Shown: piece after piece, positions 24,885 to 47,998 of the stretch | How positions within the stretch are numbered: the first letter of the stretch is position 1 | How the letters are laid out: the number at the start of each line of letters is the position of its first letter | Assembly: GCA_035084275.1 (NCBI GenBank) | Contig: CM068770.1 | Span: 4,030,001 to 4,094,000, forward strand | DNA: 64,000 bases | From: Hydrolagus colliei | Lineage: Eukaryota | Direction: 5' to 3' | Translations under genes and position numbers: made by a program | The notes under the pieces: model-generated | What the model saw: the letters and a program-made list of their open reading frames with translations, nothing else | What the model was told of the DNA's origin: nothing | Database searches by the model: none

Positions 24885-25135
24885 TGCACACACTCACAGA
24901 CACACGCGCACACTCACAGACACACGCACACACTCACAGACACACGCACACACTCCCAGACACACACTCACAGACACACGCACACACTCACAGACATACG
25001 CACACATTCACAGACACACTCACAGACACACGCACACACTCACAGACACACGCACACACTCACAGACATACGCACACATTCACACACACACACACACACA
25101 CTCACAGACACACACACACACACACACACAGACAC
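24885..25135 (+). repeat. Minisatellite, about 20-bp unit CACACTCACAGACACACGCA, decaying into (CA)n
   Basis: Tandem units directly visible. Confidence 0.9.
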
Positions 25136-26804: not shown

Positions 26805-27035
26805 TGCTGCAACAAGTGATGTGCACACAGCTCCTTTCACGTCAGGAGGACTTCCCAAGGACAGTCAAGGATTTGAGCTGCTGATTGGGATCAGGAGAGG
26901 TGGAGGGCGGAGGAGGAGTGTGGGGGTAGGAGGGTGGACTGAAGGCGCGGTCGAAGAGGAGTGACTTGAGACAGGCCTTGAAGGAGGCAAGGGAGGGGAG
27001 CGAGGTGAAGGGACTGTGGGATGGACTTCCAAAAG
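26805..27035 (-). mobile_element. L2 LINE 3' fragment
   Basis: rc encodes SLASFKACLKSLLFDRAF followed by the L2 tail. Confidence 0.8.
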
Positions 27036-27730
27036 GGTCTGAGAAGTGGACAGATCCATGAGGAGTTAGGCTATCACAGAGACTTTTTAATGGCCCACAA
27101 AATATGCACATTTTAACCCAACGATCCTTGGCAATCACTCTCGAGTGTAGTGACTGTGTGTTTGTAGGCAATTTGCGCCTGGCTTGGTCCCCCCAAAAAA
27201 CAGCCATGAAGTCAACGATACGGCCAGGAGACGAAGAGAAACTATCTCGAGCCTCGATCTATCTCTCGAACTTTCTCTCATTCGAAAGATGGCAATGCTG
27301 ATATTTTACAACTCCCCACCCCCACTCCCACCCAGTACTGCATTGGAATGCAAGATAGTGAACTCATATCCTGGTTGGGTTAACCCACAAGCGTCTGACT
27401 AAGAGGCTAGAGTGTTGGGGGAAATCAACCGAGACAAGCTAACACGATCACTGATTTTCAGACACTCCACTTAAATTCTATTAGTAGCACAATGAAAGGG
27501 CGGTTTCCTCGCTAACTCGATTCTTCGTCTTATTATCAGACGCGCGCACGTGTGTGTGTGTGTGGAGTGAGGAAACTCGCCCCGAGGTTTCACCCTGACC
27601 TGCCGGGAATCGAACTCGGGTCTCTCGCTTGCCCGCTATAGCGCTCTAACCCGCTGAGCTACAAGTCTCCACGAGAGCTGCAGGGAAGGAGAGAATAGCC
27701 CCCCCAAAAAAGTTTCCCCGTCGTTCTTAC

Positions 27731-27758
27731 CTCAGCTCGGTGGCCACAGCTCCCGGCT
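27731..27758 (-). CDS. Gene A first cytoplasmic micro-exon (28 nt, phase 1 to 2): EPGAVATELR
   Basis: Acceptor CTTTCTCGTTACAG, donor GAG|GTAAGA; bridges the TM exon and the 24781 exon in frame. Confidence 0.75.
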
Positions 27759-29992
27759 CTGTAACGAGAAAGACTTTTACGGAGGACGCGTTCGCAGCCT
27801 AACTAACTATGCGCCAGCAAACGGGTGGCGTTGCTATGGAGTGAGCTTGTGGGAGTGAAATCAGAACCCGAGCCAGAAAACGCCGTACAGTATCGCACTC
27901 ACAGGAAAACCGTGGGCGTTTGTGTTCGTTTCTTTCATGCTCTCCGCCGCGAGGCAAAGCTCGCTCATTGAACTTAAAAGTGGAGCAGAGTAACCAGAGG
28001 CACAGCTTAACCCCGGGAATAGTGTTTCGATATATTGTTTTAAGGATTCGAACACACAGGTCTCCCCAGCTTGCAAGACAAGTGCTCTAACCACTAAGCC
28101 ACAGGAGCTCGCGATGGCACTTTTAAATTGGTTTCTCTTCTGCTTTAGCTTTTCTTTTGCACTTGAGCGCTGAGGGCTGACGGCAAGGGCTAGCGGCTGG
28201 CTGGTATCCCTGACCTTCTGAAAGTGCTGAATCTATTGCTGCGATGGTTTTCACCTGAAGGCGGATCACACAGATCTGACTAATCAAAGTGTAAATCACT
28301 TCCCCGCCCTCGCAAACCAAGTGGCGGTGCTCCTCACACGTGGCATCGGCTGTCTTTTACTTCCAACAAATTTCCCCCCCCCCCCACCCCCCCCAACCAC
28401 ACACAAAAAATACTAATAATACCCTAAACGCAGTAGATGGGAATGGTTTAAAATGATAATTGATTTCGACTGCGTTGAGTTTTTTTTTGATGAGAGTAAC
28501 AATCCTCGCATTCGACATTGTGTCTTATTAAGTCGTTAAGACGTCTCAAATCGCTTTGCAGCGTATTTTGCCCACGTATGTAGTCTTGTATTCACAGTAT
28601 ATCCTGCGAAGCGCTTTGAGACACAGTCTTAAGAAGACATGAAAAGCGCTATATCAAATGCAAGGATTATTATTCTTGTATACTATAAAGTGAAGTGACT
28701 ACGTGTGTTGCAAACGAAACGTAGCAGCCCGTTGAGCATATCTCTTAACAACAACAAAATACAACAAAATTACACTTATATAGAGCCTTTCACGTCAGGA
28801 TGACGTCCCAAGGCGCTGAATCTGAAGGCCTCGTCCTTTCACTTTACCGCTTAGTACAGAACCAAACTCTGGTCTGTCCGTGTCTCTGTTAAACATCTGT
28901 GTCCGAGCATTCCACAGCTTCGTCGATTCCTCGTTAGGAGTGAGGGAGTTGCTCACCAAAAAAAATACAGTCAATTCACTTTACATGACCATTCTGTGAA
29001 GCGCTTCGAGTCATCCCAACGACTTGAGAAAGGCGAACTGTCAAACCAAAAAGGTTAACATATCGCTTTCTGTCCTCAGCGCTGGCTACTTCGGTTTGTC
29101 TCTCGCTCACTGATTTGTGCAAACCCATCAAAAAAAACACACTGGGACTGAGTAAAGCCAACATCTGGTTTTAAGCAGCCAGAATGACATGACAAAATAG
29201 AATTACATGATTCAATCTTTCGCTCTCAAAGCCTCTGGCCTGCGATTTGGGGGCTGGGGTAGGTGGGGAGGCAAGGTCAGAATTGAGGAACGACCAAAAC
29301 CACATTGCAAAGCATGTGATCCAAACGCCCAGCTTGAGTCCCATAAAAAGTCAGTCATCGCTGGCACGAGACACGGAGTGAGGTCACTTTGCTTGCAATC
29401 CTAGTTCCACTTCCCACACCACAAGGATTAAGAGTTTGGTCCTAAAGACTGACAGTCCATCACTTTGGGATGTTCTCTCGACCTGAATGGCGCTGCACAA
29501 ATGTAATTTTGTTCTTCATTATTTGGAGCCAAGCCGGGAGGGGGGGGGGGGGGAGGGGGAGCTGGTGGAACTTTCTGTTGGAAGCTGTGGTCAAGGTAAA
29601 TAGCATCAACGTACGAAAGAGGAAACTCAATACAGCGCATAAGAAACTTCAAAAGGGAAAGGATATGAGATATTATTTTGTATAGTAATAATCCTAATAA
29701 TTATAAAGCGATAATAAAAAGCTATGTAGTGCCGTATCACCTCCTTAGACTGTCTCAAAGTGTTCTGAAGGATCCCCACCGTTAAGCGAATCGACTGTGT
29801 ACGTTATGAGCGAAGGATATACTGTAAAGCGAGTTGACTGACTGTACATGTTGTGGGGGTGAAATGGTCCATTGTTAGACCAGGAGACAGCGTGAATGTG
29901 TTGTTTGTACCCAACCACAGCTTGTCGCAGCTCACGAGTGATGTAGGAGCCGAGGTTAACACCTTCTGCCCAAAGCGTTCGATTTGTCTCAC

Positions 29993-30091
29993 CTTTCAGC
30001 TGCCGTTTCATTACGCAGTAGATGGAAATCAGCACAGACACCACCACAGCTACTGCCAGCGCAGGCAACAACACACAAAACAGCTTCGAGC
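29993..30091 (-). CDS. Gene A transmembrane exon (phase 1 to 1), uncharged TM
   Basis: Acceptor TTCTCGTTCACAG, donor AAAG|GTGAGA; GSKLFCVLLPALAVAVVVSVLISIYCVMKRQLK. Confidence 0.9.
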
Positions 30092-30851
30092 CTGTGAACG
30101 AGAATGTAGCAAAAGTCACTTGCCGACAAACGAGGGCCCCCAGAGCGTGGTGGTTAGAGCACTCGCTTCGTGTGTGGGGGCCACGGGTTCAATTCCTGGT
30201 TAGGGCGAAACTTTTGGAAAGTTTCTTTACTCCACACACACACACACACACTCACACTCACACACGCTATGTTCACCTTGCAGTAAACAGGAACCTAGTC
30301 ATTAGTCAATCGGTGAATGGCGTTCCGGGGAATAGGTAATAATCTCTTCTAAGAGTCTTGGAATCTAAGACTGTTTGTGGGAAACTGCTGTGCGCCATTG
30401 GCTGCCGCGTTTCGTCCACAAAATGTAGTCAATCCACCTCACACTATATTTTGCCTACCAAATAAATACACAGTCGATCCATTTTATGGAATATTCTGTG
30501 AAGCACTTTGAGGCAGGCTAGAATATGTGCTGGATCAGATGCAAGGATTATTCTTATTCTTATTATGAGGCGTGTTTACCGGCAATTGATCGCTGATCTA
30601 TTACGATCAACAAATCCACTCATTTCAAAACTACTGCGAGAGCGCAGAACATTAAACCAACTCGGTTCAAAGCCTTCGTAAATGGCGAGTTGACTCTTCT
30701 CTAGATCTTTGTGCTTTACAGACAGGTTGAGATCTGTTTTGAGTCTCACTATAACAGCACTCTGTGTCTCTAACAGTCGCGAGGAGCCTTAATAAATTGG
30801 TCATTTCAATCCACGACTGTTTCGTGGGGATGACTACTGCGCCCACGCCAA

Positions 30852-31184
30852 ATAATAATAATAATAATCCTTGCATTTGATATAGCGCTTTTCACATCTG
30901 ATCGACGTCTCAAAACGCTTCATAGAATATACTGTGAAGTGAAGTGACTGTATACGTGTGGGCGAAACGCGGCAGCCGATTGCGCGCAGCAGCGTCCCCC
31001 CCCACAAACAGTTGGGGATCGAAATGACCAATTTTTATTACTGTGTTCTTTTTTGGAGGGATTATTATTAGGCGTGTGGAGTAAGGAAACTTGCCCAAGG
31101 TTTCGCCCTGACCTGGCTGGATTCGAAACACAGGTCTCACGCTTGTAAGGCGAGTTGCTCTAACCACTCAGCTACAGGAGCTCC
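30852..31184 (-). mobile_element. tRNA-derived SINE, full length
   Basis: Close to consensus; ends GCTACAGGAGCTCC. Confidence 0.92.
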
Positions 31185-31403
31185 ACGAGTGCAACGCTTC
31201 GAGACGCCCTCCAGACCCGAAAGACGCTTCATCCAATGTATTTTGGATAAAAATAAAACAACTTTATTATATTTAAAATAGATCAGATATCCTGAGCAAC
31301 TTTGTCTGAGACTCAGGAAGAGAGAACTCAAGGAACAAAATGTATCTTGGCAATTTGCCTGAACGACTTGGCAGTGAAACTTAATGGGTTTTATTTTACT
31401 TAC

Positions 31404-31715
31404 CCACAGCACGTAATCGCGTGAAAACTTTGGACCTATTCTGCCCGTGGATGTTGTTCGCCTCACACAGGTACGTTGCCTGATCCTGCGACTGTAGAAA
31501 ACCGGTTTGGTTTATGGTAAGCGTCCGCTGAGTTTGGTTTGTCTCCGCGAGTTTCTCTCCGTCTTTAATCCACGTCAATGTGCACCCTGGGTTACAGTCC
31601 ACGGAGCAGGTCAGTTCTAGGAAGGAGCCCTCAGAGACAAAGACGGAGATGTTCGCAGGCTGATATGTGACTTGTCCGTTTGTCCTGTACGTGATGACAG
31701 GTTTCTGCGGAGCAT
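31404..31715 (-). CDS. Gene A Ig domain 3 exon (C2/I-type, Siglec-like)
   Basis: 312 nt, phase 1 to 1; YAPQKPV...VSEGSFLELTCSVDCNPGCTLTWIKDG...DQATYLCEANNIHG; CCCTATCAG acceptor, GTAAGT donor. Confidence 0.92.
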
Positions 31716-31798
31716 CTGATAGGGAAACGGAACAAGAGCTCTTATACAAAACATAAGATAAAAATAATAATAATACTTGCATTAATATAGCGCCTATA

Positions 31799-31913
31799 GA
31801 GTCCTGCTCACTGGTTAGAGCTCTCGCTTTACAAGCGTGAGACCTGTGTTTCGAATCCAGGCAGGTCAGGGCGAAACCTTGGGCAAGTTTCTTTACTCCA
31901 CACACACACACAC

Positions 31914-31959
<46 letters not shown>

Positions 31960-32182
31960 GCCGAATAATATTCCCTCCAAAAAAGCATCTATAATAAATT
32001 GGTCATTTTCAATCCACGACTGTTTGTGGGGGGGACGCTGCTGCGTGCAATTGGCTGCCGCGTTTCGCCCACAACTATACGGTCAATTCACTTTACAGTA
32101 TATTCTATGAAGCGCTTTGAGACGTCTAGAAGATGTGAAAAGGCGCTTTAGCAAATACAAGTTATTATTAGTATATTATTAT
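31799..32182 (+). mobile_element. tRNA-derived SINE, full length
   Basis: All modules present; inverted relative to the 30852-31184 copy. Confidence 0.92.
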
Positions 32183-32343
32183 TATCAAAATGCTTTACAG
32201 AATAATAAAGTGTATATTTTGTAAGCGAAATGATGGAACAAAAGAGCCTGTTAGACGAGGACAGAGGACAACAGGAATTGTTAGAAATAAATACACTTCC
32301 AGATTGCGGGAAGACAGTTTAACATGTAATTGGTGAGACTTAC

Positions 32344-32622
32344 ACTCGATACACAGTCTGACTTCAGTCCGAGCTACGGCTGCGTGAACATTGGTCTTGG
32401 TGCTGATCTGACACGCACACACACTCCCATTGTCTCTCATTCCGGCAGTGATGGGAAGTTGGCTGGTGAACAATCCAGAGTCCTTGGAGACTGAGCCACT
32501 GATATTCTCTGCGTGCAGTTCACAGGTGAAGGCGAGGTTCATGAAGGGAGATACCTGAGCAGAGCAGTTTAGGGTAGACCTACGTCCTACAACCAGGACG
32601 GACGAAGAGATGCGTGGAGTGT
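32344..32622 (-). CDS. Gene A Ig domain 2 exon (C2-type, resembles Siglec domain 2)
   Basis: 279 nt, phase 1 to 1; DTPRISSSVLVVGRRSTLNCSAQ...FTSQLPITAGMRDNGSVCACQI; TCTCTTCTGCAG acceptor, GTAAGT donor. Confidence 0.88.
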
Positions 32623-33099
32623 CTGCAGAAGAGAAGGTTCAACGGTATGAAAGTACATGAGTCTGTCGATGTCAGAGGTGATAACGCTGTCACTTTGCAG
32701 CAATGCTTCACAATAATAATACTGCAATAATAATCTTTATAATTGGTACAGTGCGATTCATAGAGGGAGGACATCTCAAAGTGTTCCACGGGATTTATTG
32801 GAGGGACTGGCTGTTTGTAAGAAGAGAGGGGCGGCCCATTCGCATTAAATGTGCCACAAACTGCCCTAAAGTGAATAACCGAGTCTGTTTTTTATCAGGA
32901 GATCGCAGAGCCAGGTGGGGAGGGAAGGCAGTGTGAAAGTAAAATGATTTGGCTATTTCTGTAATAACTTTCATGTGCAACAGCAGTTGCAAACCCAAAG
33001 TCTGACGACATTTTGAGAGGGTGAACTGCGCGAACGACACGAGGTGAAAAACCTATCGCTGTTGTCGATAGCACGTGTTTTAGAATAGGAACACACACA

Positions 33100-33340
33100 C
33101 ACACGCACGCACGTACACACACACACGCGCCTAATAATAATCCCTCCTCCCAAAAAACTACATTAATAAAATTGGTCATTTCAATCCACTACTGTTTGTG
33201 TTGGGGAGACGCTGATGTGTGCAATTGGCTGCCGCGTTTCACCCATAAATATACAGTCAATTAACTTTACAGTCTATTCTGTGAAGCGCTTTGAGACGTC
33301 TAGAAGACGTGAAAAGCGCTATGTCAAAATGCAGGGATTA
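33100..33340 (+). mobile_element. tRNA-derived SINE lacking head
   Basis: (CA)n, central block and tail. Confidence 0.85.
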
Positions 33341-33767
33341 ATTGGCAAAACAACAATTGGGAGGAGACCAGATATGATATCAACAGGAATGTTTCTAAAT
33401 ATCCTTCTCAGTTTCGATGTGACTAATAAAACAACACAATTGTACATTGATATGTACACTCCCCTAATCTTACCCCACAGCCCTGTAAATTTTCCTTTTC
33501 AAATAATGCTTGCATTTCATCTTCTGGTTATTCACCCACCCACCACAGGAAACAGTCTCTCCCTATTTACTCTTATCAAACCCAAACGATTCCTAGCTTC
33601 ACTAGTCTCTCCACATAAGATCCACGTCCCTGGAATCATTCCGGTAAATTTCCACAATTTCACTTTTGTTGCAAAATAGTTCCGTGCGAAATTTAAATGT
33701 CTTAAAATTCCTCCAAAACAAGAAATTAGAACCGGTTTTAGCCGTCAGATCATTGATTTGATTTACG

Positions 33768-33910
33768 TTCTGACGAAGGGTCGTGGACCCGAAACGTTGA
33801 CTCGCTTTTTCGTTCTCTCTCCATAGATGCTGCCTGACCTGCTGAGTGTTCCCAGCCATTTCTGTTTGTGTTTCAGATTTCCAGCATCCGCAGTGTTTTG
33901 CGTTTTCATT
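33768..33910 (+). mobile_element. Penelope-like element terminal fragment with hammerhead core
   Basis: CTGACGAAGGGTCGTGGACCCGAAACGTTGACTC...ATAGATGCTGCCTGACCTGCTGAGTGTTCCCAGCCATTTCTG. Confidence 0.7.
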
Positions 33911-34143
33911 TACGTTAAGATTCGCTTTGTGCAGAACTGTGACCAGTTCTTAAATTCAGCCTTTGGGAGCTATCTTACTGTAAGTCTTTTTTTTTGGAAC
34001 CAAAATATAGAAATAAGATTGATTTTCAAATATTTCCTCCCAAATTTAAAGATTTAAGGCTAAACCCGGGTGGAACTTTAGTGCTGGTGTACTAAGCAAG
34101 CATCAGCCCTTGTTATTAATTTACCATAATAAAAAAACTTTAC

Positions 34144-34464
34144 CAGAAACATGTAACCGTGTCCCTCCTCCTGTTTTATCCGCAGTCCCGTTTTCTGTTG
34201 TGATGGTGACCTCACAGTAATATGTTGTATTAGATTGTTCAAGAGAGACGTTTGCAATCTGTGTGGTTATCCAACAGCTAACAATCTCTGTGTGTTCAGT
34301 GCAGAACACATTATTCTTCAGGAAAAAACGAGGTTTTGGAAACCAGTGTATAAAAATCAAGTCACTTCGAATTCCAGTGTAACTAAATGTACAGTTTAAC
34401 GTGACCGATTCCCCTCTCCATACGCTGACCTCATGAGGCTGAGTCACCTCTAGGATCACAACAC
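34144..34464 (-). CDS. Gene A V-type (germline VJ) exon
   Basis: 321 nt, phase 1 to 1; VTQP..V.VWRGESVTLNCTF..W..YYC..GGGTRLHVS; CTCACCAG acceptor, GTAAAG donor. Confidence 0.93.
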
Positions 34465-34469
34465 CTGGT

Positions 34470-34575
34470 GAGATAATAATAATAATATTAATAATAATAT
34501 TAATAATCCTTGCATTGATAAAGCGCCTTATCACGTCATCGTGACGCCTCTAAGCGCTTCACAGAATATACTACA
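34470..34575 (-). mobile_element. SINE 3' tail fragment abutting the V-exon acceptor
   Basis: rc TGTGAAGCGCTTAGAGGCGTC...ATCAATGCAAGG(ATT)n directly followed by ATCTCACCAG. Confidence 0.85.
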
Positions 34576-34854
34576 GACTGTGAGTGTGTGTGGAGGACGG
34601 CATCAAGTCTGTCATAACGCAAATGTACCCAGATTAAACTAACGAGGATCAACAGTGATTCATGTTAAACATTCGTTTGTGCTCTAATCACACGCAAACC
34701 AAATTCAAATAAAAAACTTTGGTTGTTTCCCATTTCAGATCAATGTGACATTTTCAAGGAGGAATTTCTGTGAAGCTATTTCTCTATTTTATTGTTAAAC
34801 GTTTCACTGAAACCACGACACTCTCGCTTGGCACACGTCGCTCCTTATCACAAT

Positions 34855-35075
34855 AATAATACTGGTAACAATCCTTGCATTCAATATAGCGGCTTTTCAC
34901 CTCTTAATCGACGTCTCAAAGCGCTTCACAGAATATACTGTAAAGTGAATCGACTGTATATTTGTGGGCGAAACGCGACAGCCAATTGCGCACAGCAGCG
35001 TCCCCCACAAACAATCATGGATTGAAATGACCAATTTGTTTTATTATTGTGTTTTTTTTGGAGGGATTATTATTA
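34855..35075 (-). mobile_element. tRNA-derived SINE lacking head
   Basis: Central block and tail. Confidence 0.85.
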
Positions 35076-35923
35076 GGATTCCAACTGTGTGTGCCTCTTG
35101 ATGTCACATTAGGAAGATTTTAACTGTAAAGAAAACAACTTTAACTGTCGCAACTTGAGGATCCAGTCATTCGGAAATCATCTGCAGCCAAAATCAGTCA
35201 TTTCAAACACTGAACATTTTAGCAGTTAAAATTCAATAAAACTTTTGCTTAAAAGATGAGAATTTGGTCACTCAGTCCACGACTGTTTGTGGGTCACTGA
35301 CATCTGTGCGCAGTCGGCTGCCGCATTTCACCCACAACATATACAGTCAATTCACTTTACGGGATATTGTGTGAAGCACTATGAGACGTCTCGAAGACCT
35401 GATAAAGCGCTGTATCAAATGCAAGAATTATTATTATTATTAAACACGTAAAAGCTACCGAAAGATTCAATTTGTAAAGGATTTTCAGGACCTCCATATT
35501 ACACACTCGCATTGTGATAAATAATTTTGATAAAGATTTTGGTACATCAACTTTTTCGCTTTGCCAAGAGGTCTCAAAGTGTTTCAGATGATTTACCGGA
35601 GTGGAGCTGCTGTAGCTCAGAGGTTAGAGCACTCGCCTTACAAGCGTGAGACCTGTGTTCGAATCCATGCAGATCAGAGCGAAACCTTTGGCAAGTTTCC
35701 TTACTTCACACAAAGCGCTTCCGTGAAGCGCTTTGAGACGTCGATAAGATGTGAAAAGCCGCGATATCAAAGGCAAGGATTATTACTAGTATCATCACTG
35801 TAAAGGGGGTTCGGTGGACGAAACGCGGCAGCCAGTTCGTGCGCAGCGGCGTCCCACAAACAGCCACGGGAACCCTTTGAGTGGCCGTTGAACCGCGATC
35901 AGTCGCATGGATGAATCTCAACC

Positions 35924-35970
<47 letters not shown>

Positions 35971-35975
35971 CTCAC

Positions 35976-36024
35976 CATGTGCCTCAGCCAGCACAGTAAA
36001 GAGCAAGCTCGGAATTAGCAACAT
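35976..36024 (-). CDS. Gene A signal-peptide exon: MLLIPSLLFTVLAEAH(G)
   Basis: GCGATG start, 49 nt, phase 1, donor G|GTGAGT, hydrophobic leader. Confidence 0.88.
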
Positions 36025-40841: not shown

Positions 40842-40890
40842 ATGTGGGTTTTGGCAATCGCTCTCTCTCTGGTGTTGGTGGGTGTGACAG
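40842..40890 (+). CDS. Gene B signal-peptide exon: MWVLAIALSLVLVGVT(G)
   Basis: GCGATG start, 49 nt, phase 1, donor CAG|GTGAGT; ETS-type CTTCCTTCCTG at 40691. Confidence 0.9.
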
Positions 40891-40918
40891 GTGAGTGATA
40901 TTCATACTACATGTTACA

Positions 40919-41062
40919 CGGAGTCCTGCAGCTCAGTGGTCAGAGCACTCACTCGCCTTACAAGCATGAGACCCATGTTCGATTCCAGGCAGGTCAGGGC
41001 GAAACCTTGGGCACGTTTCCATACTCCACACACACACACACACACACACACATCTACTCATA

Positions 41063-41100
<38 letters not shown>

Positions 41101-41330
41101 ACACACACACACACTTAATAATCCATCCCCCAAAAAAACCACAACAATAAAATTATTCATTTCAATCCACGACTGTTTGTAGGGGGGAACGCTGCTGTGC
41201 GCAATTGGCTGCCTGCCACGTTTCACCCACAAATATATATACAGTCAATTCACTTCACAGTATATTCTGTGAAGCGCGTTGAGACACCCAGAAGACATGA
41301 AAAGCACTATAGCAAATGCAAGGATAATTG
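40919..41330 (+). mobile_element. tRNA-derived SINE, full length
   Basis: All modules present; gene B intron 1. Confidence 0.9.
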
Positions 41331-41499
41331 ATATTCTGAAAATACTTTTGCCGTAGTTTCGAACTGTCTGTCAGCACAGTGGCTGAGGATCTCAAACGGA
41401 CCTGGACAATGTCAGGTTTCATGGTGTTTTGTGCTTCAAGACAAAGTAAACACAGTATTTTAATGGACAATCATGTTTAACTTCTAAAATTGTGGTAAT

Positions 41500-41820
41500 A
41501 AACAATCCTTGCATTTGATATAGCGCTTTTCACAGCACGAAAGACCTGTTTTCGCTGTCTCACAGCGCTTCACAGAATATACTGTAAAGTGAATTGACTG
41601 CATAGTTGTGGGCGAAAAGCGGCAGCCGATTGCACACAGCAGTGTCCATCCCCCACAATTAGCTGTAGATGGAAAGAACCAATTTATTATTGTTTTTTTT
41701 TGAGGGATTATTGTCGAGCGTGTGGGGTAAGGAGACTTGCCCCAAGATCTCACACTGCCTGAAATCGAACCTAGGTCTCTCGTGTGTGAAGCCAATGCTC
41801 TAATACTGAACTACATGGCT
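41500..41820 (-). mobile_element. tRNA-derived SINE, diverged full length
   Basis: Inverted partner of the 40919 copy in the same intron. Confidence 0.85.
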
Positions 41821-42108
41821 CCAAACCGTGGCAATAAATGACAATAAACAATCCTTTTATTTGGTGTAAGTGCCTCAAACATCATCATACGATTTACTGT
41901 ACTGTGTAGTGACTGTGCATTTTGTAGTGAAACACAGTAGCCAGATTTGCTGTAAGATTCTACGGTTGTATGATCACGGAACATTGCTGAAGCGTTCTAT
42001 ATTTTATACGATGAACTCGTACCGTAAAAGAGATGGTGAGCGCACAGTAATTAATGTCGCTCATTTCACATCAACATCTCGGCTTCACAGATTGTTTTAT
42101 CTCACCAG

Positions 42109-42429
42109 GTGGTGTGATCCTAGAGGTGACTCAGCCTCGTGAGGTCAGCGTATGGAGAGGGGAATCGGTCACGTTAAACTGTACATTTAGTTACACTGGA
42201 ATTCAAAGTGACTGGATTTTTACACGCTGGTTTCCCAAACCTCGCTTTTTCCTGAAGAATTATGTGTTCTGCACTGAACACACAGAGATTGTTAGCTGTT
42301 GGATAACCGCACAGATTGCAAACGTCTCTCTTGAACAATCTAATACAACATATTACTGTGAGGTCACCATCACAACAGAAAACGGGACTGCGGATAAAAC
42401 AGGAGGAGGGACACGGTTACATGTTTCTG
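42109..42429 (+). CDS. Gene B V-type (germline VJ) exon
   Basis: 321 nt, phase 1 to 1; 311/321 nt identical to the gene A V exon; CTCACCAG acceptor, GTAAAG donor. Confidence 0.93.
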
Positions 42430-43144
42430 GTAAAGTTTCTTTATTATGGTAAATTAGTAACAAGGGCTTATGCTTGATTAGTACACCAACACAGAAGTTC
42501 CACTTGGGTATAGCCTTCAAGTTTTGGGGGAAATATCTGAAATTCAATCTTACTTCTATATTTTTGTTTAAAAAAGACTTACAGTAAGATAGCTCCCAAA
42601 GGCTGAATTTAAGAACTGGTCACAATTCTGCATGGTTACGTGTTGATGGTAAAGTTTTATTTATTATGATAAACTAATATCAAGGGCTTCGGCTTGCTTA
42701 GCACACCAGCAAAACATTATTGAGGTCAGGCTAATGGGGCTATAGCTGATACGTGTGATTCTGTTGCCTTTCTTGAATCACTGGTTAAGCACAGAATAAT
42801 AATGCTAATAATTATAAAAATAATGTTAATAATAATAATATAAGAAGAAAAGGAAGAAAAAATATTACAATCCTGGCATATGATACAATAAATTATCACT
42901 GCCCTTCATAATATATTCCTGTGAAGCGCTTTGCGACACGATTAGACGCTATATCAAATGCAAGGATCATTATTAATTTAGTGTTATCACGTTGTTGAGC
43001 CATCTCAAAGCGCTTCAAACAGTGAACTATAAGGTGGATTGACTGTGTGGTTGGGGGGGGGGGGGGGAGGGTGGGGGGGGGCGACACGGAGAGAATACGT
43101 GTTGCGGAAAGGAGCGTGACGTTCGTTTTGCTTTGACGTTTTAG

Positions 43145-43486
43145 TCCCGGATTCGGCTCCGACCGTCCGGCTTACACAGGGAATATTGAGAGCAGATGTC
43201 AGATCCTTTGTGCGGTGCGAGGCCTGGGGATTCTCTCCTCGAGACATCTCGCTGAGCTGGCAGCACCTAGGACACAGAGTCCCCAGCAACACCCAGGCTC
43301 CTCGGGCTCACAGATACACCAGCAAACTGCTCGAGGGCGACAGCGCGGACGATGGCACCTTCCACATCATCAGTGAACTGTGGTTCATCCCAACCCCCGG
43401 AGATCACCAGACAGACTGCGTGTGTCAAGTCAAACACTCCACAAGCGATGTGCCCCTATACGGACGTATATCACTGAACGTGAAAT
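43145..43486 (+). CDS. Gene B Ig domain 2 exon (C1-set-like)
   Basis: 342 nt, phase 1 to 1; PDSAPTVRL...CEAWGFSPRDISLSW...DDGTFHIISELWF...DHQTDCVCQVKH; GTTTTAG acceptor, GTGAGT donor. Confidence 0.92.
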
Positions 43487-44350
43487 GTGAGTCTGTTACA
43501 GTGCGTTAATCGCGTTTAAATTGATTGGAAGTTCAGCAGTGGTACGTGTACATTGTTTACTCCACAGGCCTACTCATAATCCGTTAAAAAACCCCACAAA
43601 ATTGGTCATTTCAATGCACACTGCCGAGCGCAATTGGCTGTCGCGTTTCGCCCACAAAATATACAGTCAATTCAATTTACAGTATATTCTGTGAAGCGCT
43701 TTGGGACGTCGATAAGACGTGAAAAGCGCTATATCAAATGTAAGGATTATTATTATTATCCCACATCCAATACAGTAGGATTTAGATTTTTTTTGGTGTG
43801 GTTTTAATCAGTTCCTTGGCAGTTAACTCTCACTATAGTAGGTTGACATTCATTCTTCACTGAGAATAGAGTGTGTGTGTGTGTGCATGTGTGAGAGTGA
43901 GTGTGAGGACAGACTGAGTGTGAGAGTGACTGTGAGAGTGATTACCGGAAAAGTTAAAATAAAAGTGCATGTCCCATGCATAAAGTCTCTCAGCATAAAG
44001 GAGTACATCATATAGTACGACCCAGTTAGTATAAATATAAGACAGAGGCAAGAAAAGGGAAAAGAGTGGTTAGGAGAATTCTTTTAACGCACAGACTAAT
44101 TCGGTCATGAAATGTCTTGCCAAGTAAATTGGTGCAGATCAGAATCCATTTGTGGGTTGTGAGTACATTGACGGGTACAAGACAGAGAGAGAGAGAGAGA
44201 GATGGTTGAAGGTGGGGAGAGGGTTGGGGGAATTGGGATCGATTGGGATCCAGGGCAATGGGATTGAATGGACAGAGAATGGGTGCAATGGGTTCGTTCC
44301 TCCCACGCTTGTAAATGTCTACACTTGTCTCTTACGGCTTTTGATTCCAG

Positions 44351-44668
44351 ACGCTCCGCAGCTCTCCGTCGCTTACCGGATCTCGGCGTCCGATCGGCTG
44401 CGGCCGGTGGAGCGAGGGACCCTCGACGTGGCCGAACGCTCGTTCCTGGAGCTGAACTGCACCGCGGACAGCCACCCGGCGTCCACAGTTACCTGGGAGA
44501 GGAAAGACGGCCGCGGCGGAAGCCTCCAGTTCGACACGGCAGTCGGCAGTGTCGTCTGGAGGAGGTCGGAGCTCAAGGCGACGGATGTGGGCATCTTGTG
44601 GTGCAGAGCGGACAATGAATGCGGCACAAGGACAAACTCTGTCGCGGTATATACGTCTCACCCCATTA
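44351..44668 (+). CDS. Gene B Ig domain 3 exon (C2/I-type, Siglec-like)
   Basis: 318 nt, phase 1 to 1; YAPQLSV...VAERSFLELNCTADSHPASTVTW...DVGILWCRADNECG; GATTCCAG acceptor, GTAAGT donor. Confidence 0.92.
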
Positions 44669-45174
44669 GTAAGTGCAGCACAGAGTAAACACAGTCAAAC
44701 GTCTCAGATAGGAAGTCCAGTGCTTAGAGCACTCGCACTTAACGAGGGAGAGAGACCTGGGTTCGTTTCCAGGGCGGGTCAGGGCGAAACCTCGGGCAGC
44801 TTTCCTTGCTCCACACACGCCTGCCAATAATTATTTCTTCTTATTATTATAAATAATGGATTGAAGTGACCCAATTTTTAAATTAAAAAATATATATATT
44901 TAAAGAAAAATAAATTGGTCGCTTCAATCTTTGTGGGACTATCGCGCGCCATCGGCTGCCGCATTTCGCCCACGAATACACACGGTCAATTCACTTTACA
45001 GTTTATTCTGCGAAGACACTTTGAGACACAGTCTAGAAGTGCTATATCAATTGCCGGGGTTCTTATTCATTACAGTTCTACTGTTCGAGGAGCAATTTTC
45101 TCTGCGTGTTAGACGCCCCGCAGTGTTAAACCGTCCACAGAAGCATCTGATAAGGCCTCACGTTGTTTCCACAG

Positions 45175-45258
45175 GTGCTTTCCCTTTTCGTGCCGTGACA
45201 GTCCCCATCTTCCTGGTCACCGTCGCCTTGTTGTTGATCTGGAGCAGGAAGTCCAAAG
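45175..45258 (+). CDS. Gene B transmembrane exon with Arg
   Basis: SAFPFRAVTVPIFLVTVALLLIWSRKSK; TTTCCACAG acceptor, AAAG|GTAAAG donor; Arg codon at 45189-45191. Confidence 0.9.
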
Positions 45259-45427
45259 GTAAAGCTCACTAAAGCATTTTGACACTGAAGCCGATTTTAC
45301 GTTGGGTTTTTAATGCAAGTTGTTGCGTTCAGGCACTCTTCCTCCTACTCCACCCACTCCCCCTGCCCTCCTACCTTTCCCGATCCCGGTGTCCGCTGAT
45401 TCCTATTTGCTCTTGTTCCATTTGCAG

Positions 45428-45452
45428 ATCCGTTTTGCTTCTCCAAATACCG
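45428..45452 (+). CDS. Gene B cytoplasmic micro-exon (25 nt, phase 1 to 2): DPFCFSKYR
   Basis: TCTTGTTCCATTTGCAG acceptor, CG|GTAAGT donor. Confidence 0.78.
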
Positions 45453-45499
45453 GTAAGTCAGGATTTCAGTCTGGCATTTGATACGGTTGTCGGCATCAG

Positions 45500-45630
45500 A
45501 GGAACGTGGAAGGAAATCAAGAACAGTACATTGGGACAGATGGAGATAGTGCAACAGGAAGGACACAGGTTGAAGATTGTCGAGGGCAATTTTAGGACTG
45601 AAACCGCAAAGTTATTCCTTTATTCAGAAC
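45500..45630 (+). mobile_element. Degenerate CR1 ORF2 fragment
   Basis: Encodes GHRLKIVEGNFRTETAKLFL, like the CR1 C-terminal GHRFKI motif. Confidence 0.6.
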
Positions 45631-45635
45631 ACCTT

Positions 45636-46515
45636 CAACAACAACAACAAATTACATTTATAGAGCGCCTTTCACGTCGGGAGGACGTCCCAAGGCGCTG
45701 CACAGGAGGCGTGTGACCCGAGCTGAGAGGGGAGTGTTTGGGAAGGGGTGAGACACGAAGGGGAGGTCGAAAAATTCGGGGTGGAACAAAAGGCACGATC
45801 GAAGAGGAAAGTCTTCAAACCGGCCTTGAAAGAGGAAAGGGAAGAGATGAGACGGAGGGATTGAGGGATGGTATTCCATAGGGTGGGAGCGGAGAAACTG
45901 AAGGCCCGGCCTCCGATGGTGGGGCGGTTCGGGCGGGGGGCTTGGAGCAGGCCAAGTCCTGTTGAACGGAGGGTCCGGGTGGGCGTGTAGGGGGAGAGTA
46001 GATCGGTTAAATAGGGCGGGGCAAGGCCGTGTAAGGCCTTGTAGGTGAGGACGAGGATCTTGAACTCGATCCTCTGGAGGATGGGGAGCCAGTGGAGACG
46101 GGCGAGGGTGGGGGTTATATAGTCGCGGAGGCGGGTGCGGGATAGTACATGGGCTGCAGAGTTTTGAATGACCTGCAGCCTGTGAATGGAGGAACTGGGG
46201 AAGCCGACGAGGAGAGTTTCCATAGCCCAGCCGTGAGGTGATGTACGCGTGCACGAGTGTTTCAGCAGCGCGGGGGGTAAGATAGTTGCGGAGCCTGGCA
46301 ATGTTGCGCAGGTGGAAATAAGCGGTTCCGGTCAAGGCGCGGATGTGGGGGAGGAAAGAGAGTTTTTGATCGAACATGATGCCGAGGTTCCTGATTGGCT
46401 TTGTGAGGTGGAGAGTGCAGCCTTGGATATTGAGACTGGCAGCGCCCGATGTGCGGAGGCGCTGGCTTGAGCCGATCAGGAGGGCCTCGGTCTTACTCAC
46501 GTTCAATTGCAGGGG
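45636..46515 (-). mobile_element. L2 LINE, 5'-truncated, ORF2 C-terminus with a frameshift
   Basis: KTEALLIG...RNLGIMFD.KLSFLPHI...AYFHLRNIARLR / LQVIQNSAAHVL...LHWLPILQRIEFKILVLTYKALHGLAPPYL; complete 3' tail with (GTT)n. Confidence 0.95.
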
Positions 46516-46809
46516 GGGCGTGGGTTTAAAAATTAATCCTTCCCCCAAAAAATGTAAAAATTGGTCACTTCAATCCACGACTGTTTGTGGGACACTGCGC
46601 TCTACGCCTTGTTACGTCTTCCCGACAGGAAAGGCGCTCTATCAATGTAATTTTGTTGTTGTTGCGAATAATTGGTTGCTGTACTTTTCCAGTGTATGTA
46701 TTCTGCGAAGCACTTTGAGACGTCTCGAAGGTGTGATAAGGGTGCAAGGGTGGTGGTTATTGGAATTATTATTGATTAAGGGAGGTTGAGGCCATGAGAT
46801 TATAATGAT

Positions 46810-47050
46810 ACTAATAATCCTTGCGTTTGATATAGCGGCTTTTCACATCTTATCGACATCTCAAAGCTCTTCACAGAATACACTGTAAAGTGAATTCACT
46901 GTATATATATTGGTGGGCGAAACGCGGCAGCCAATTGCGCACAGCAGCGTCCCCCCCCCCCCCCACACAAACAATATTGAAAATATTGGATTGAAAATGA
47001 CCAGTTTTTCTTATCGTGGTATGTTTTGGGGGGACGGATTATTATCAGGC
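46810..47050 (-). mobile_element. tRNA-derived SINE lacking head
   Basis: Central block and tail. Confidence 0.85.
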
Positions 47051-47192
47051 CTTATTTCACAATACGTCCCAATAGATATTATTTCACAATACGTCTGTGT
47101 GATGAGTGGTTAGTAGGGTTTGTGTTCTTCTTCATCCAAGCCAACACTGGGGGAAACGTCCTTGTTGCTCTCCTCTCCTCACTGCCTTGTAG

Positions 47193-47214
47193 GAAGTCCT
47201 CTTGCGCCACATGA
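47193..47214 (+). CDS. Gene B last coding exon: (R)KSSCAT*
   Basis: Strong acceptor CTCTCCTCTCCTCACTGCCTTGTAG; phase 2 fits; total CDS 1161 nt = 386 aa plus stop. Confidence 0.7.
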
Positions 47215-47998
47215 TCAGCTCTAAGGCGAGAGGTGGCTTCACCTCGGGTGCTACCTGATGCCTGTGGTCTCGAGTGTTTTACGCTTTGTCTCAACAGGAA
47301 ACCGAAGCGACAAGACGAACAAGCGAAAGATGGCGAGGAGGTCACTGCAGAAAAGTGTACAGCGCTCTGCGATTAAACAGAGTCCGTGCACGAAGCACCT
47401 TTGGACTTGTTCGTTAGCAATGGTCGGAGGTTGGCGATGCACCAACGGCTTTATTTTTAACGCCAGCCAACGGAGAAACTATTTCCACCGACGAGTCGGG
47501 TCGGTCGGTCACCAGAGGACATCGATTTAAAGCTGTCGCTACAAGGAACAGACAACGTAATTCCAAGTCCTGATGCCTAATAACTTGTCGTGGGTTGAAA
47601 AGAACAATTTATTATTGATTTTTTATTGAGGAATTATTGATATTATCAGGCATGTAAAGAAATGTGCCAAAGGTTTCGCTCTGCCCGGCTCTAACCACTG
47701 AGCTGTGGGACTCCGCACGACTGATAAATGATCCCTCCAACTAAATTATTAAATACGTATTGTGATGCATTGAATCGCAAGAAATGCAATCTGAACCCAT
47801 CACCACGTGCGCACTTACCGGTTGCATGAAATGACGCAAACTTGGAGGTGTAGATTATTGATCGAGTCAGATTTGTTTTTACGGCCTCGACATCTAGACA
47901 ATTCACTTTGTCCCAGAACTTTGGGACATCCTCTTGACCTGAGAGGCTCTACACAAAAGCAATTCCTTGTCCTCGTTAATGTCGTGATATTCTAAATG

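What the first reader, a model, noticed from the sequence alone, without database searches (positions are those of the whole stretch)
40842..47214. Gene B: non-rearranging VJ domain plus a C1-like domain plus a Siglec-like C2 in one activating receptor
Seen: the V exon encodes its own J-like G strand (TGGGTRLHVS) with no RSS. Domain 2 has C1-set hallmarks (CEAWGFSPRDISLSW, DDGTF..ISEL, CQVKH); GFSPRDI matches SIRP-alpha domain 2 as I recall it, while LWFIPTPGDHQT recalls Siglec domain 2. Domain 3 begins YAPQ with a long linker, as in Siglec/CD22/MAG. Established: C1-set domains are largely confined to Ig, TCR, MHC, beta-2m, tapasin, SIRP, B7-H6 and a few germline VJ-C1 genes (chicken PRARP, Xenopus VJ-C1), which are discussed as relatives of the pre-RAG antigen-receptor ancestor. 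Inference: a mosaic germline VJ-C1 receptor in the oldest jawed lineage with adaptive immunity.
Basis: partly seen in the sequence, partly recalled or inferred. Interest (0 to 1): 0.7.

Follow-up and report, generated by a model that had tools for sequence, protein, structure and literature searches.

The report
Chimaera VJ-C1 activating receptor gene
An intact, unannotated cartilaginous-fish gene encodes a surface receptor with an antibody-like VJ domain, a true C1-set constant domain, a third Ig domain and an arginine in its membrane span; it looks like the activating partner of the ITIM-bearing gene next door, and both belong to an old fish receptor family I found described in no paper.

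Summary
Gene B (40842-47214, + strand) is an intact 7-exon gene with phase-1 Ig exons. A single exon encodes V plus a J-like GGGTRLHVS strand, with no RSS heptamer nearby. Domain 2 scores as C1-set (30.8 bits) above C2-set_2 (20 bits). Its model best matches beta-2-microglobulin, MHC class II, SIRP and UrIg2. GFSPRDI does match SIRP-alpha domain 2. The C-terminal half of domain 2 and the YAPQ linker best match CD33 domain 2.

The "one-off mosaic" reading is only partly right. Gene B belongs to a VJ-C1-Ig family found in sharks, rays, chimaeras, basal ray-finned fishes and coelacanth. Databases auto-name its members Siglec, MAG, SIRP or CADM-like. Domain 3 is a generic I-set domain, not specifically Siglec-like.

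Domains 2 and 3 and the arginine-bearing membrane span group with shark and ray "B-type" genes. The V exon is 97% identical to that of head-to-head gene A, an ITIM-bearing relative, so it looks gene-converted.

Best reading: the activating half of an inhibitory/activating pair. The Callorhinchus counterpart is a decayed pseudogene. Ligand, adaptor and expression are unknown. Any link to the pre-RAG antigen-receptor ancestor is untested.

The parts
40842..40890 (+). Gene B exon 1: start codon and signal peptide (MWVLAIALSLVLVGVTG)
   Evidence: ATG at 40842, GT donor at 40891, phase 1
42109..42429 (+). Gene B exon 2: a single-exon VJ domain. It has the canonical Cys41-Cys100 pair, an extra Cys71/Cys80 pair conserved across the family, four N-glycosylation sites, and a J-like GGGTRLHVS strand.
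   Evidence: AG/GT, 321 nt. Pfam V-set scores 29.2 bits but matches only the first 34 profile positions. It aligns end to end with TCR-alpha and Ig-lambda V-J. The family profile best matches Ig light-chain V-J. The AF2 model has pLDDT 91. No RSS heptamer is present.
43145..43486 (+). Gene B exon 3: the C1-set Ig domain (CEAWGFSPRDISLSW ... DDGTFHIISEL ... CVCQVKH ... ISLNVK)
   Evidence: Pfam C1-set 30.8 bits against C2-set_2 20 bits. The AF2 model has pLDDT 85 with predicted C' and D strands. Foldseek top hits are beta-2-microglobulin, MHC-II beta-2, SIRP-gamma, UrIg2 and SIRP-alpha.
44351..44668 (+). Gene B exon 4: the third Ig domain, I-set/C2-like, beginning YAPQ
   Evidence: Pfam Ig_2, Ig_3 and I-set. 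PDB best hits are contactin, Robo and MuSK, with MAG lower.
45175..45258 (+). Gene B exon 5: stalk and membrane span with arginine (AFPFRAVTVPIFLVTVALLLIWSRKSK)
   Evidence: AG/GT, 84 nt. The motif R-x-V-T-V-P-I-F...LLLIW is shared with the shark and ray B-type genes, and in variant form (R-x-V-T-Y-P-L-F...LLLY) with the paddlefish and bowfin genes.
45428..45452 (+). Gene B exon 6: short cytoplasmic exon (DPFCFSKYR)
   Evidence: AG/GT. It resembles DRYGPCNCRH and DRCFLCNRR in the shark and ray B-type proteins.
47193..47214 (+). Candidate last exon as read by the first stage (KSSCAT, then stop)
   Evidence: AG acceptor and in frame. No evidence from relatives supports it.
47298..47376 (+). Alternative last exon (KPKRQDEQAKDGEEVTAEKCTALCD, then stop). 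It is unused if the 47193 exon is spliced in.
   Evidence: Good acceptor and in frame. Its charged K/Q/D/E composition loosely recalls the tails of the shark and ray B-type proteins. No significant alignment was found.
42097..42632 (.). Block shared with gene A (34476-33930, opposite strand): the V exon plus about 200 nt of downstream intron. Probable gene-conversion tract.
   Evidence: 92.5% identity over 547 aligned columns, the only low-copy match between the two genes. The exon is 311/321 identical, the intron 183/203. Similarity starts 12 nt before the exon and stops abruptly at 42632.
42631..42711 (+). Second, more diverged copy of the V-exon 3' end and intron start, lying at the edge of the shared block
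   Evidence: 81% identical to 42412-42491 and 85% to gene A 34161-34082. It looks like a recombination scar.
23275..36024 (-). Gene A, the head-to-head neighbour. Exons: leader 35974-36024; V 34145-34465; degenerate domain 2 about 32345-32626; domain 3 about 31411-31716; uncharged TM 29994-30086; cytoplasmic exons 24185-24244, 23969-24073 and 23275-23418, which carry DTVYAVV, VSYADII and TEYAAVHI.
   Evidence: tblastn with Callorhinchus P0001, coordinates. Its domain 2 matches no Pfam family. The region upstream of its leader is conserved with the Callorhinchus locus.

Best explanation
Gene B encodes a type I membrane glycoprotein. Its parts are a signal peptide, a germline-joined VJ-type domain, a C1-set domain, an I-set domain, a membrane span with an arginine near its outer end, and a short tail of 21-35 residues without ITIM or ITAM.

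It is the holocephalan member of an old "B-type" lineage within a VJ-C1-Ig receptor family of cartilaginous and basal bony fishes. It lies head to head with gene A, an "A-type" member with an uncharged membrane span and three tyrosine motifs of ITIM type.

The V exon, presumed to bind the ligand, is kept nearly identical between the two genes by gene conversion. The pair would therefore see the same ligand and signal in opposite directions. Gene A would recruit SH2 phosphatases through its ITIMs. Gene B would pair through its arginine with an acidic ITAM adaptor; the outer-leaflet position fits the FcR-gamma / CD3-zeta type better than DAP12.

Shown here: gene structure, domain classes, family membership, the conflict between the V tree and the domain 2/3 trees, and conservation of the membrane-span motif.

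Inferred: adaptor pairing, opposite signalling, a shared ligand, and expression.
For: - The 7-exon ORF is intact with canonical splice sites.
- Domain 2 is C1-set. Pfam C1-set scored above C2-set_2 in gene B and in all 8 of the 10 relatives checked individually that gave hits (margins 4.8-32.6 bits), and 27 of 29 family members match each model. The family profile matches UrIg2 C domains, Ig CH domains and SIRP. Foldseek TMq values are SIRP-gamma 0.73, MHC-II beta-2 0.72, beta-2-microglobulin 0.68-0.69, nectin-1 D2 0.65-0.66 and MAG D2 0.58.
- Homologues with the same architecture exist. Pristiophorus P0002 is 41% identical over V plus C1 and has the same membrane span and short tail. Hemiscyllium, Hemitrygon and Scyliorhinus also have one, and the V and TM exons were found in the first two loci.
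- After those, the next named relatives are mammalian SIRP-alpha and SIRP-beta.
- In the V tree, gene A, gene B and the Callorhinchus A gene form a clade (quick tree SH-aLRT 98; only 54/71 in the careful tree, where gene A + gene B is 96/94). The sawshark B-type V sits among the elasmobranch A-type Vs. Forcing gene B with the sawshark B gene is rejected (p-AU 6e-8).
- In the domain 2 and domain 3 trees, gene B groups with the elasmobranch B types (94/85 and 91/89). Grouping it with the A types is marginally rejected (p 0.035 and 0.042).
- Only a 536-bp block around the V exon is shared with gene A.
- The membrane-span arginine and its motif are conserved from chimaera to sharks and rays, and in variant form in paddlefish and bowfin.
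- In paddlefish, the arginine-TM gene lies 7.4 kb from a long-tailed family member.
- Gene A carries DTVYAVV, VSYADII and TEYAAVHI.
Against: - No expression data, ligand or adaptor is known.
- The syntenic Callorhinchus copy is a decayed pseudogene, with a stop in a truncated V exon and a truncated domain 2 exon. The B gene is therefore dispensable in at least one holocephalan.
- Gene B's domain 2 has a long terminal branch (1.04, against 0.12-0.42 for the shark and ray B types).
- The ten V-exon differences from gene A are 8 non-synonymous and 2 synonymous. That fits either diversifying or relaxed selection.
- The AU tests on domains 2 and 3 are only marginal, and the groups were fixed after a first look at the data.
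- The 3' end of the gene is unresolved.
- The V model resembles I-set as much as V: Lrig3 TMq 0.69, against 0.55-0.60 for light chains.
Confidence: 0.6

Rival explanations
1. Gene B is an unexpressed or decaying relic. It would be a young pseudogene that still reads open, kept looking intact only by conversion from gene A.
For: The syntenic Callorhinchus copy is clearly dead. Gene B has a long domain 2 branch. dN/dS on the V exon against gene A is about 1. The protein was not in the 5.8-billion-protein collection, so no annotation pipeline has called it.
Against: - All seven exons are open with canonical AG/GT sites and matching phases.
- Conversion covers only the V exon. Yet domain 2, domain 3 and the TM, which are not converted, keep both cysteines, the tryptophan, DGTF, C-x-V-x-H and the whole membrane-span motif.
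- The AF2 models are confident, with pLDDT 85 and 91.
Confidence: 0.2
2. Gene B and its family are the fish orthologues of SIRPs, and its V domain binds a CD47-like ligand.
For: SIRP-alpha and SIRP-gamma are the best PDB sequence hits, including the GFSPRDI motif. SIRP-alpha and SIRP-beta are the next named relatives of the B type. NCBI names the paddlefish arginine-TM member SIRP-alpha-like. The paired inhibitory/activating organisation matches. A V-set exon at 55114-55632 (-) gives a marginal V-set_CD47 hit, 21.8 bits against a cut-off of 21.
Against: - Domain 3 is I-set, not C1.
- In the V and domain 2 trees, SIRPs fall outside the fish family on long branches, with no supported nesting.
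- The family domain 2 profile matches Ig CH and UrIg2 C domains as well as it matches SIRP.
- The CD47 hint did not hold up. No CD47 appears among the PDB hits, and no multi-pass TM exons lie downstream.
- Synteny with the SIRP locus was not examined.
Confidence: 0.1
3. Gene B is a Siglec, that is, a sialic-acid-binding lectin, as the automatic names of its relatives suggest.
For: The C-terminal half of domain 2 and the YAPQ linker best match CD33, Siglec-5 and Siglec-10. MAG matches domains 2-3. Gene A has an ITIM plus ITIM-like tail. NCBI names relatives Siglec-5, 6, 10, 11, 12 and 13.
Against: - The V domain has the canonical B-F disulfide (YYC) and a J motif. The residue after the F-strand cysteine is Glu, where Siglecs carry the essential Arg (read from the sequence; Siglec features are established knowledge).
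- The V profile matches Ig light chains, not Siglec V domains.
- Domain 2 scores and folds as C1-set.
Confidence: 0.03
4. Gene B is a nectin/PVR/CADM-type adhesion molecule (V, C1-like, C2).
For: It has the same three-domain order and Y-x-P linker. Nectin-1 D2 is a good structural match, TMq 0.65-0.66. Nectin-2 and PVR match the C-terminal half of domain 2. NCBI names relatives CADM1-like and CADM2-like.
Against: These matches are weaker than those to C1-set proteins. The V domain carries a J motif and lacks the TFP-type motif after the F-strand cysteine (read from the sequence; PVR motifs are from my own knowledge). The tails are ITIM-type or short with an arginine in the membrane span, which is immunoreceptor logic rather than adhesion.
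Confidence: 0.05

Closest known systems
SIRP family (SIRP-alpha, beta, gamma)
   Same: VJ-like N-terminal domain followed by a C1-set domain. The GFSPRDI(S/T)L.W motif is shared. SIRPs are the best PDB sequence hits and among the top structural hits. The family has inhibitory ITIM members and activating members with a charged membrane span and near-identical V domains.
   Different: The third domain is I-set rather than C1. The V domain has an extra conserved disulfide and is short. The charge is an arginine near the outer end of the span, whereas SIRP-beta has a mid-membrane lysine (my own knowledge). No supported nesting with SIRPs appears in the trees. Orthology and CD47 binding are untested.
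CD33-related Siglec pairs (Siglec-5/14, Siglec-11/16)
   Same: A neighbouring inhibitory/activating gene pair whose V exon is homogenised by gene conversion (for the Siglec case see PMC5701461 and PMC4042635). The C-terminal half of domain 2 and the YxPQ linker resemble CD33 and Siglec-5 domain 2. Gene A has ITIM-type tail motifs.
   Different: The V domain is a canonical VJ domain, without the Siglec arginine or the unusual Siglec disulfide pattern. Domain 2 is a full C1-set domain with C' and D strands.
UrIg / UrIg2 (shark non-rearranging VJ-C1 genes; PMC12227049, PDB 9dmx)
   Same: A germline-joined VJ exon followed by a C1-set domain in a cartilaginous fish. UrIg2 C domains are the top hit of the family domain 2 profile (48.6 bits for one domain) and a structural hit.
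   Different: UrIg2, as crystallised (V-C1-C2-C3), forms a disulfide-linked dimer whose C2-C3 part resembles IgG Fc (PMC12227049). Gene B is a single-C1 membrane receptor with an I-set third domain and paired-receptor signalling features.
NKp30 (NCR3)
   Same: A non-rearranging VJ domain and an arginine in the membrane span (my own knowledge). NCBI names one Scleropages isoform of this family NCR3. NKp30 appears among the structural hits of the V model (ranks 33 and 36).
   Different: NKp30 has no C domains. It was not among the best 60 sequence hits of the V domain or of the V profile.
Nectin / PVR / CADM
   Same: The same order of V, C1-like (Pfam C2-set_2) and C2/I domains, with a Y-x-P linker.
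   Different: Those are adhesion molecules. Here the profile and structure scores favour C1-set proper, the V domain is of VJ type, and the tails are of immunoreceptor type.

Membership tests
Non-rearranging (germline-joined) VJ gene | V framework and J-like G strand (G-x-G-T-x-L-x-V) encoded in one exon | tested here: met
   Exon 42109-42429 runs from the A strand to GGGTRLHVS and ends at a GT donor. The strand aligns with Ig-lambda and TCR-alpha J. G98, G100 and T101 are invariant in the family.
Non-rearranging (germline-joined) VJ gene | No recombination signal sequence splitting or flanking the V | tested here: met
   No CACAGTG or CACTGTG in 41900-42700. Only exact consensus heptamers were searched, with no nonamer or degenerate scan.
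Non-rearranging (germline-joined) VJ gene | True V-set fold, with C' and C'' strands | tested here: inconclusive
   Pfam V-set scores 29.2 bits, above its cut-off of 26, but matches only profile positions 1-34. The AF2 model shows only two strands between C and F. The best TM-score is to an I-set domain (Lrig3, 0.69), against 0.55-0.60 for light-chain V. Relatives in sharks and bony fish have a longer V.
C1-set Ig domain (Pfam PF07654) | Scores above the family cut-off and above the C2-type models | tested here: met
   30.8 bits against a cut-off of 21; C2-set_2 scores 20 bits, below its cut-off of 21. C1-set was the higher score in all 8 of the 10 relatives checked one by one that gave hits. 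27 of 29 members hit each model.
C1-set Ig domain (Pfam PF07654) | C1 fold, with a D strand and closest structures being C1 domains | tested here: met
   The AF2 model (pLDDT 85) has strands at 43-45 (C') and 57-66 (D). The top 38 Foldseek hits are beta-2-microglobulin, MHC, SIRP, UrIg2 and Ig. MAG D2 ranks 39 (TMq 0.58) and nectin-1 D2 ranks 44. The margin in E-value is under tenfold, and sheet pairing could not be read from the output.
SIRP family | V-C1-C1 ectodomain | tested here: not met
   Domain 3 matches Ig_2, Ig_3 and I-set, not C1-set. The family domain 3 profile matches DSCAM, contactin and titin.
SIRP family | Orthology: tree nesting or shared synteny with SIRP genes | tested here: inconclusive
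   SIRPs are the next named relatives but sit on long branches outside the fish family. Synteny was not testable, because the window holds no framework genes.
SIRP family | Binds CD47 | not testable with these tools
   This needs a binding assay. The neighbouring V-set exon's marginal CD47-family hit was not backed.
Siglec family | V-set domain with the essential F-strand arginine and no canonical B-F disulfide | tested here: not met
   The F strand reads YYCEV. The canonical cysteine is present and the next residue is Glu. The V profile matches Ig light chains.
Siglec family | Domain 2 of C2-set_2 type, nesting among Siglec domain 2 sequences | tested here: inconclusive
   The C-terminal half is most like CD33 domain 2, but the whole domain scores and folds as C1-set. 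No tree with Siglec domain 2 sequences was built, because none could be fetched.
Paired activating immunoreceptor | Basic residue in the membrane span and a short tail without ITIM | tested here: met
   FRAVTVPIFLVTVALLLIW, then SRKSK. Neither candidate tail (21 or 35 aa) has a tyrosine motif. The arginine is conserved in shark, ray, paddlefish and bowfin members.
Paired activating immunoreceptor | Neighbouring inhibitory partner with a near-identical ligand-binding domain | tested here: met
   The V exon of gene A is 311/321 nt and 98/106 aa identical. Gene A has an uncharged membrane span and VSYADII and TEYAAVHI motifs.
Paired activating immunoreceptor | Association with an ITAM adaptor, giving an activating signal | not testable with these tools
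   This needs co-expression and immunoprecipitation.
PRARP (chicken non-rearranging VJ genes) | Sequence relationship to PRARP | not tested
   The paper is not held, and no PRARP sequence could be obtained with the tools.

The most novel reading that the evidence does not exclude
This VJ-C1-Ig family could be the surviving fish representative of a receptor lineage ancestral to both SIRPs and CD33-related Siglecs. It is found in cartilaginous fishes, basal ray-finned fishes and coelacanth, and I saw no tetrapod member other than SIRPs. On this reading the Siglec C2-type domain 2 is a shortened C1 domain; the holocephalan A-type domain 2 shows such a shortening in progress. The inhibitory/activating pairing with an arginine-bearing membrane exon would then predate the split of cartilaginous and bony fishes. 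The family would also be one more germline VJ-C1 relic close to the pre-RAG antigen-receptor stock.
Probability: 0.15. Interest if true: 0.8.

Novelty: new variant of a known kind. Interest (0 to 1): 0.55.

Why it matters
Germline-joined VJ-C1 genes are few: SIRP, tapasin, PRARP, UrIg and UrIg2. They are central to arguments about what the RAG transposon invaded (PMC12227049, PMC10751288).

This is another such gene, and it belongs to a whole family that public annotation hides under contradictory automatic names (Siglec, MAG, SIRP, CADM, NCR3, tapasin-like). The family shows three things.
- A C1 domain combined with SIRP-like and Siglec-like sequence features.
- A split into inhibitory and activating types that is older than the chimaera-shark divergence, and possibly older than the divergence of cartilaginous from bony fishes.
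- V exons that evolve in concert between the two types while the rest of each gene does not.

That gives a testable model for how paired receptors are maintained over hundreds of millions of years. It also gives a candidate link between two major mammalian myeloid receptor families.

Tried and rejected
- A word-indexed protein search restricted to domain 2 found nothing. The whole-protein search found only Callorhinchus P0001.
Only the exact exon translations of domain 2 and of V were modelled.
- A CD47-like neighbour, hinted by a marginal PF08204 hit on the V-set exon at 55114-55632, was not supported. No CD47 appears among the PDB hits and no multi-pass TM exons lie downstream.
- "Domain 3 is Siglec-like" was rejected. 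It is generic I-set, and MAG ranks 23rd (single sequence) and 25th (family profile).
- [quoted passage not shown] was rejected. The same composite pattern is present in every family member.
- Seven literature searches found no description of this family. The PRARP paper is not held.
- No further family exons exist in the window beyond genes A and B. The other long ORFs are repeat or LINE fragments, or have no Pfam match, so the window gives no synteny anchor.

Full report
**What is in the sequence.** The window is repeat-rich vertebrate DNA with no N. On the + strand between 40842 and 47214 there is an intact gene. Its exons are:
- leader 40842-40890;
- V 42109-42429;
- domain 2 43145-43486;
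- domain 3 44351-44668;
- membrane span 45175-45258;
- a 25-nt cytoplasmic exon 45428-45452;
- a last exon 47193-47214.

Internal splice sites are AG/GT, the exons through the TM exon are phase 1, and the product is 386 aa. A second acceptor at 47298 gives an alternative tail of 26 residues, ending at 47376. Its composition looks somewhat more like the tails of shark relatives. Without RNA the 3' end stays open. Neither tail has a tyrosine motif. A LINE fragment sits in the last intron.

- The V exon carries its own J-like strand. GGGTRLHVS aligns with Ig-lambda J (GGGTKLTV) and TCR-alpha J (GGGTRLMV). A profile of the family's V domains best matches Ig light-chain V-J through to the J. No consensus RSS heptamer occurs within 41900-42700.
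- CEAWGFSPRDISLSW aligns with SIRP-alpha CESHGFSPRDITLKW. SIRP-alpha, SIRP-gamma and shark UrIg2 are the three best PDB sequence hits of the whole protein.
- Pfam gives domain 2 C1-set 30.8 bits over almost the whole profile. C2-set_2 gives 20 bits, below its cut-off and only over the last 35 residues.
- The AF2 model of the domain 2 exon has pLDDT 85 and shows C' and D strands. Its Foldseek hits are led by beta-2-microglobulin, MHC class II beta-2, SIRP-gamma (TMq 0.73), UrIg2 and SIRP-alpha. Nectin-1 D2 (0.65-0.66) and MAG D2 (0.58) come later.
The margin in structural E-values is less than tenfold.
- The Siglec recall is also real, but only for half the domain. The C-terminal half plus the YAPQ linker has CD33 domain 2 as best PDB hit, followed by SYG-1, Siglec-5, Siglec-10, nectin-2, MAG and PVR.
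- Domain 3 is a generic I-set domain, with contactin, Robo and MuSK above MAG.
- The V domain is short. Its model (pLDDT 91) has only two strands between C and F. By TM-score it is as close to an I-set domain as to light-chain V.

**Not a one-off: a family.**
- An exhaustive HMMER search with V plus domain 2 found 156 proteins at E no greater than 0.001. The best is Pristiophorus japonicus "sialoadhesin-like" (P0002, 408 aa, 41% identity). It has the same order of domains, the same membrane span (LLRSVSVPIFVVSVILLLIW) and a short tail.
- Further B-type genes exist in Hemiscyllium, Hemitrygon and Scyliorhinus. In the first two I found the V and arginine-TM exons in the fetched loci, although the annotated proteins lack them.
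- A-type members have an uncharged membrane span and long ITIM tails. They occur in Callorhinchus, Heterodontus, Narcine, Rhincodon, Stegostoma and Rhinoraja.
- Related genes occur in Polyodon, Lepisosteus, Amia, Albula, Megalops, Conger, Scleropages, mormyrids and Latimeria.
- The automatic names disagree wildly: Siglec-5, 6, 10, 11, 12 and 13, MAG-like, CADM1/2-like, SIRP-alpha-like, tapasin-like, NCR3, hemicentin-like.
- In the 8 of 10 relatives scanned individually that gave any hit, C1-set scored above C2-set_2. The other two, the holocephalan A-type domain 2 of gene A and of Callorhinchus, are shortened and match neither model.
- The family alignment shows the classical C1 signature C-x-A-x-GFYP-x-N-I-S-x-x-W ... 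DGTF ... C-x-C-Q-V-x-H, followed by L-x-V-x-Y-G-P.
- The family domain 2 profile hits UrIg2 C domains, Ig CH domains and SIRP at about 48 bits per domain for UrIg2 and Ig CH.
- The SIRP-like plus Siglec-like look of domain 2 is therefore a family trait, not a local splice of two genes.

**The neighbour, and the real mosaicism.** Gene A lies head to head on the - strand, with 4.8 kb between its leader (35974-36024) and that of gene B. It has a V exon, a degenerate domain 2, an I-set domain 3, an uncharged membrane span and cytoplasmic exons with DTVYAVV, VSYADII and TEYAAVHI. It corresponds to Callorhinchus P0001, and even the region upstream of the leader is conserved.

The only low-copy similarity between genes A and B is a 536-bp block, 42097-42632 against 34476-33930.
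- It starts 12 nt before the V exon and ends about 200 nt into the intron.
- The exon is 311/321 identical, the intron 183/203, and the last 120 nt of the exon are identical.
- A diverged second copy of the exon end and intron start sits at the block's edge, at 42631-42711.

The trees agree with this.
- V domains cluster by lineage. Gene A and gene B pair at 96/94; with the Callorhinchus A gene they form a clade with SH-aLRT 98 in the quick tree but only 54/71 in the careful tree. The sawshark B-type V sits among the elasmobranch A-type Vs.
- Forcing gene B with the sawshark B gene is rejected (p-AU 6e-8).
- Domains 2 and 3 cluster by type. Gene B groups with the elasmobranch B types (94/85 and 91/89). 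For domain 3 it also groups with the paddlefish and bowfin arginine-TM genes (77/82).
- Grouping gene B with the A types is marginally rejected (p 0.035 and 0.042).

So the A/B split predates the chimaera-shark divergence, while V exons are homogenised within each lineage. This is the pattern known from Siglec-5/14 and Siglec-11/16 (PMC4042635, PMC5701461).

**How it probably works.**
- The conserved arginine lies four residues into a span of about 21 residues (R-x-V-T-V-P-I-F ... LLLIW). It is shared from chimaera to sharks and rays, and in variant form (R-x-V-T-Y-P-L-F ... LLLY) in paddlefish and bowfin.
- The tail is short and lacks signalling motifs, and the neighbour carries ITIMs.
- Together these fit an activating/inhibitory pair that shares a ligand-binding V domain.
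- By analogy with NKp46, GPVI and LILRA receptors (my own knowledge), an outer-leaflet arginine suggests an FcR-gamma or CD3-zeta type adaptor. This step is inferred, not shown.
- In paddlefish the arginine-TM gene lies 7.4 kb from a long-tailed family member, so the adjacency may be old.

**Cautions.**
- In Callorhinchus the position syntenic to gene B holds only a truncated V exon with a stop codon and the first 25 codons of domain 2, followed by a stop and a repeat. The B gene has died there.
- In the window, gene B's domain 2 is on a long branch.
- The V-exon differences from gene A are 8 non-synonymous to 2 synonymous.
- Gene B could be on its way out. However, the regions that conversion does not cover keep every structural hallmark.
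- The groups used in the AU tests were chosen after a first look at identities and membrane-span motifs.
- No Siglec, nectin or PRARP sequences could be fetched for a direct tree.

**Novelty.** I found no paper describing this family in seven literature searches. The UrIg and UrIg2 papers show that such VJ-C1 genes are actively sought. Gene B itself is in no protein collection searched. It is best filed as a new variant of a known kind: a paired, non-rearranging VJ-C1 receptor akin to SIRP, with an I-set third domain and Siglec-like features. A link to the pre-RAG ancestor remains speculation.

Noticed in passing
window 55114-55632 (-): A separate V-set exon (DDTPSIIHTSVGKSVTLTCEK ... GLYICRVFSKKE ... 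IELNVT) that does not belong to the gene A/B family. Pfam V-set scores 36 bits, and V-set_CD47 gives a marginal hit (21.8 bits, cut-off 21). No CD47 appears among the PDB hits, and no multi-pass TM exons were found downstream.
   Followed up: partly
L001 (Callorhinchus MU249856.1) 4542-4667 (-) and 3750-3824 (-): These are pseudogene remains of the gene B orthologue, head to head with P0001. One is the last ~40 codons of a V exon with an in-frame stop. The other is the first 25 codons of the C1 exon (VRDSAPIIWPPQEVLRAGARSAVRC), followed by a stop and a repeat.
   Followed up: yes
window 32345-32626 (-) and Callorhinchus P0001 residues 128-224: The holocephalan A-type domain 2 is about 20 residues shorter than the B type. 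It has lost the C-strand Trp (replaced by Cys), the GFYP motif and the C'-D region, and it matches no Pfam Ig model. Elasmobranch A-type domain 2 still scores as C1-set. This looks like a C1 domain being reduced.
   Followed up: partly
L002 9746-10090 and 16299-16406; L003 7442-7792 and 17573-17650: The annotated Hemiscyllium (XP 'Siglec-10') and Hemitrygon ('syg-2-like') proteins are truncated or mis-started. Unannotated V exons lie upstream of both. An arginine-TM exon lies downstream of the Hemiscyllium model; the Hemitrygon model already includes its own.
   Followed up: partly
window 45661-46569 (-) and 63377-63781 (-): ORFs that look like LINE/CR1-like reverse-transcriptase tail fragments (no Pfam hit; identified by eye). 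The first lies inside gene B's last intron. A SINE-like element of about 150-300 bp is scattered through the window in dozens of copies, including in introns 1, 2, 3 and 4 of gene B.
   Followed up: no
L004 (Polyodon CM030285.1) 1-2587, 10001-13068, 17563-23068: In paddlefish the arginine-TM family member (362 aa) lies 7.4 kb downstream of a 524-aa long-tailed member on the same strand. It is followed by a gene with an RIIa domain, which is a possible synteny anchor.
   Followed up: no
gene B protein residues 215/217 and 328: Domain 2 carries a C-x-C on the F strand (DCVCQV), conserved across the family. Domain 3 has a third cysteine (NECGT). That leaves an odd number of cysteines in each domain, so an interdomain or interchain disulfide is possible.
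   Followed up: no
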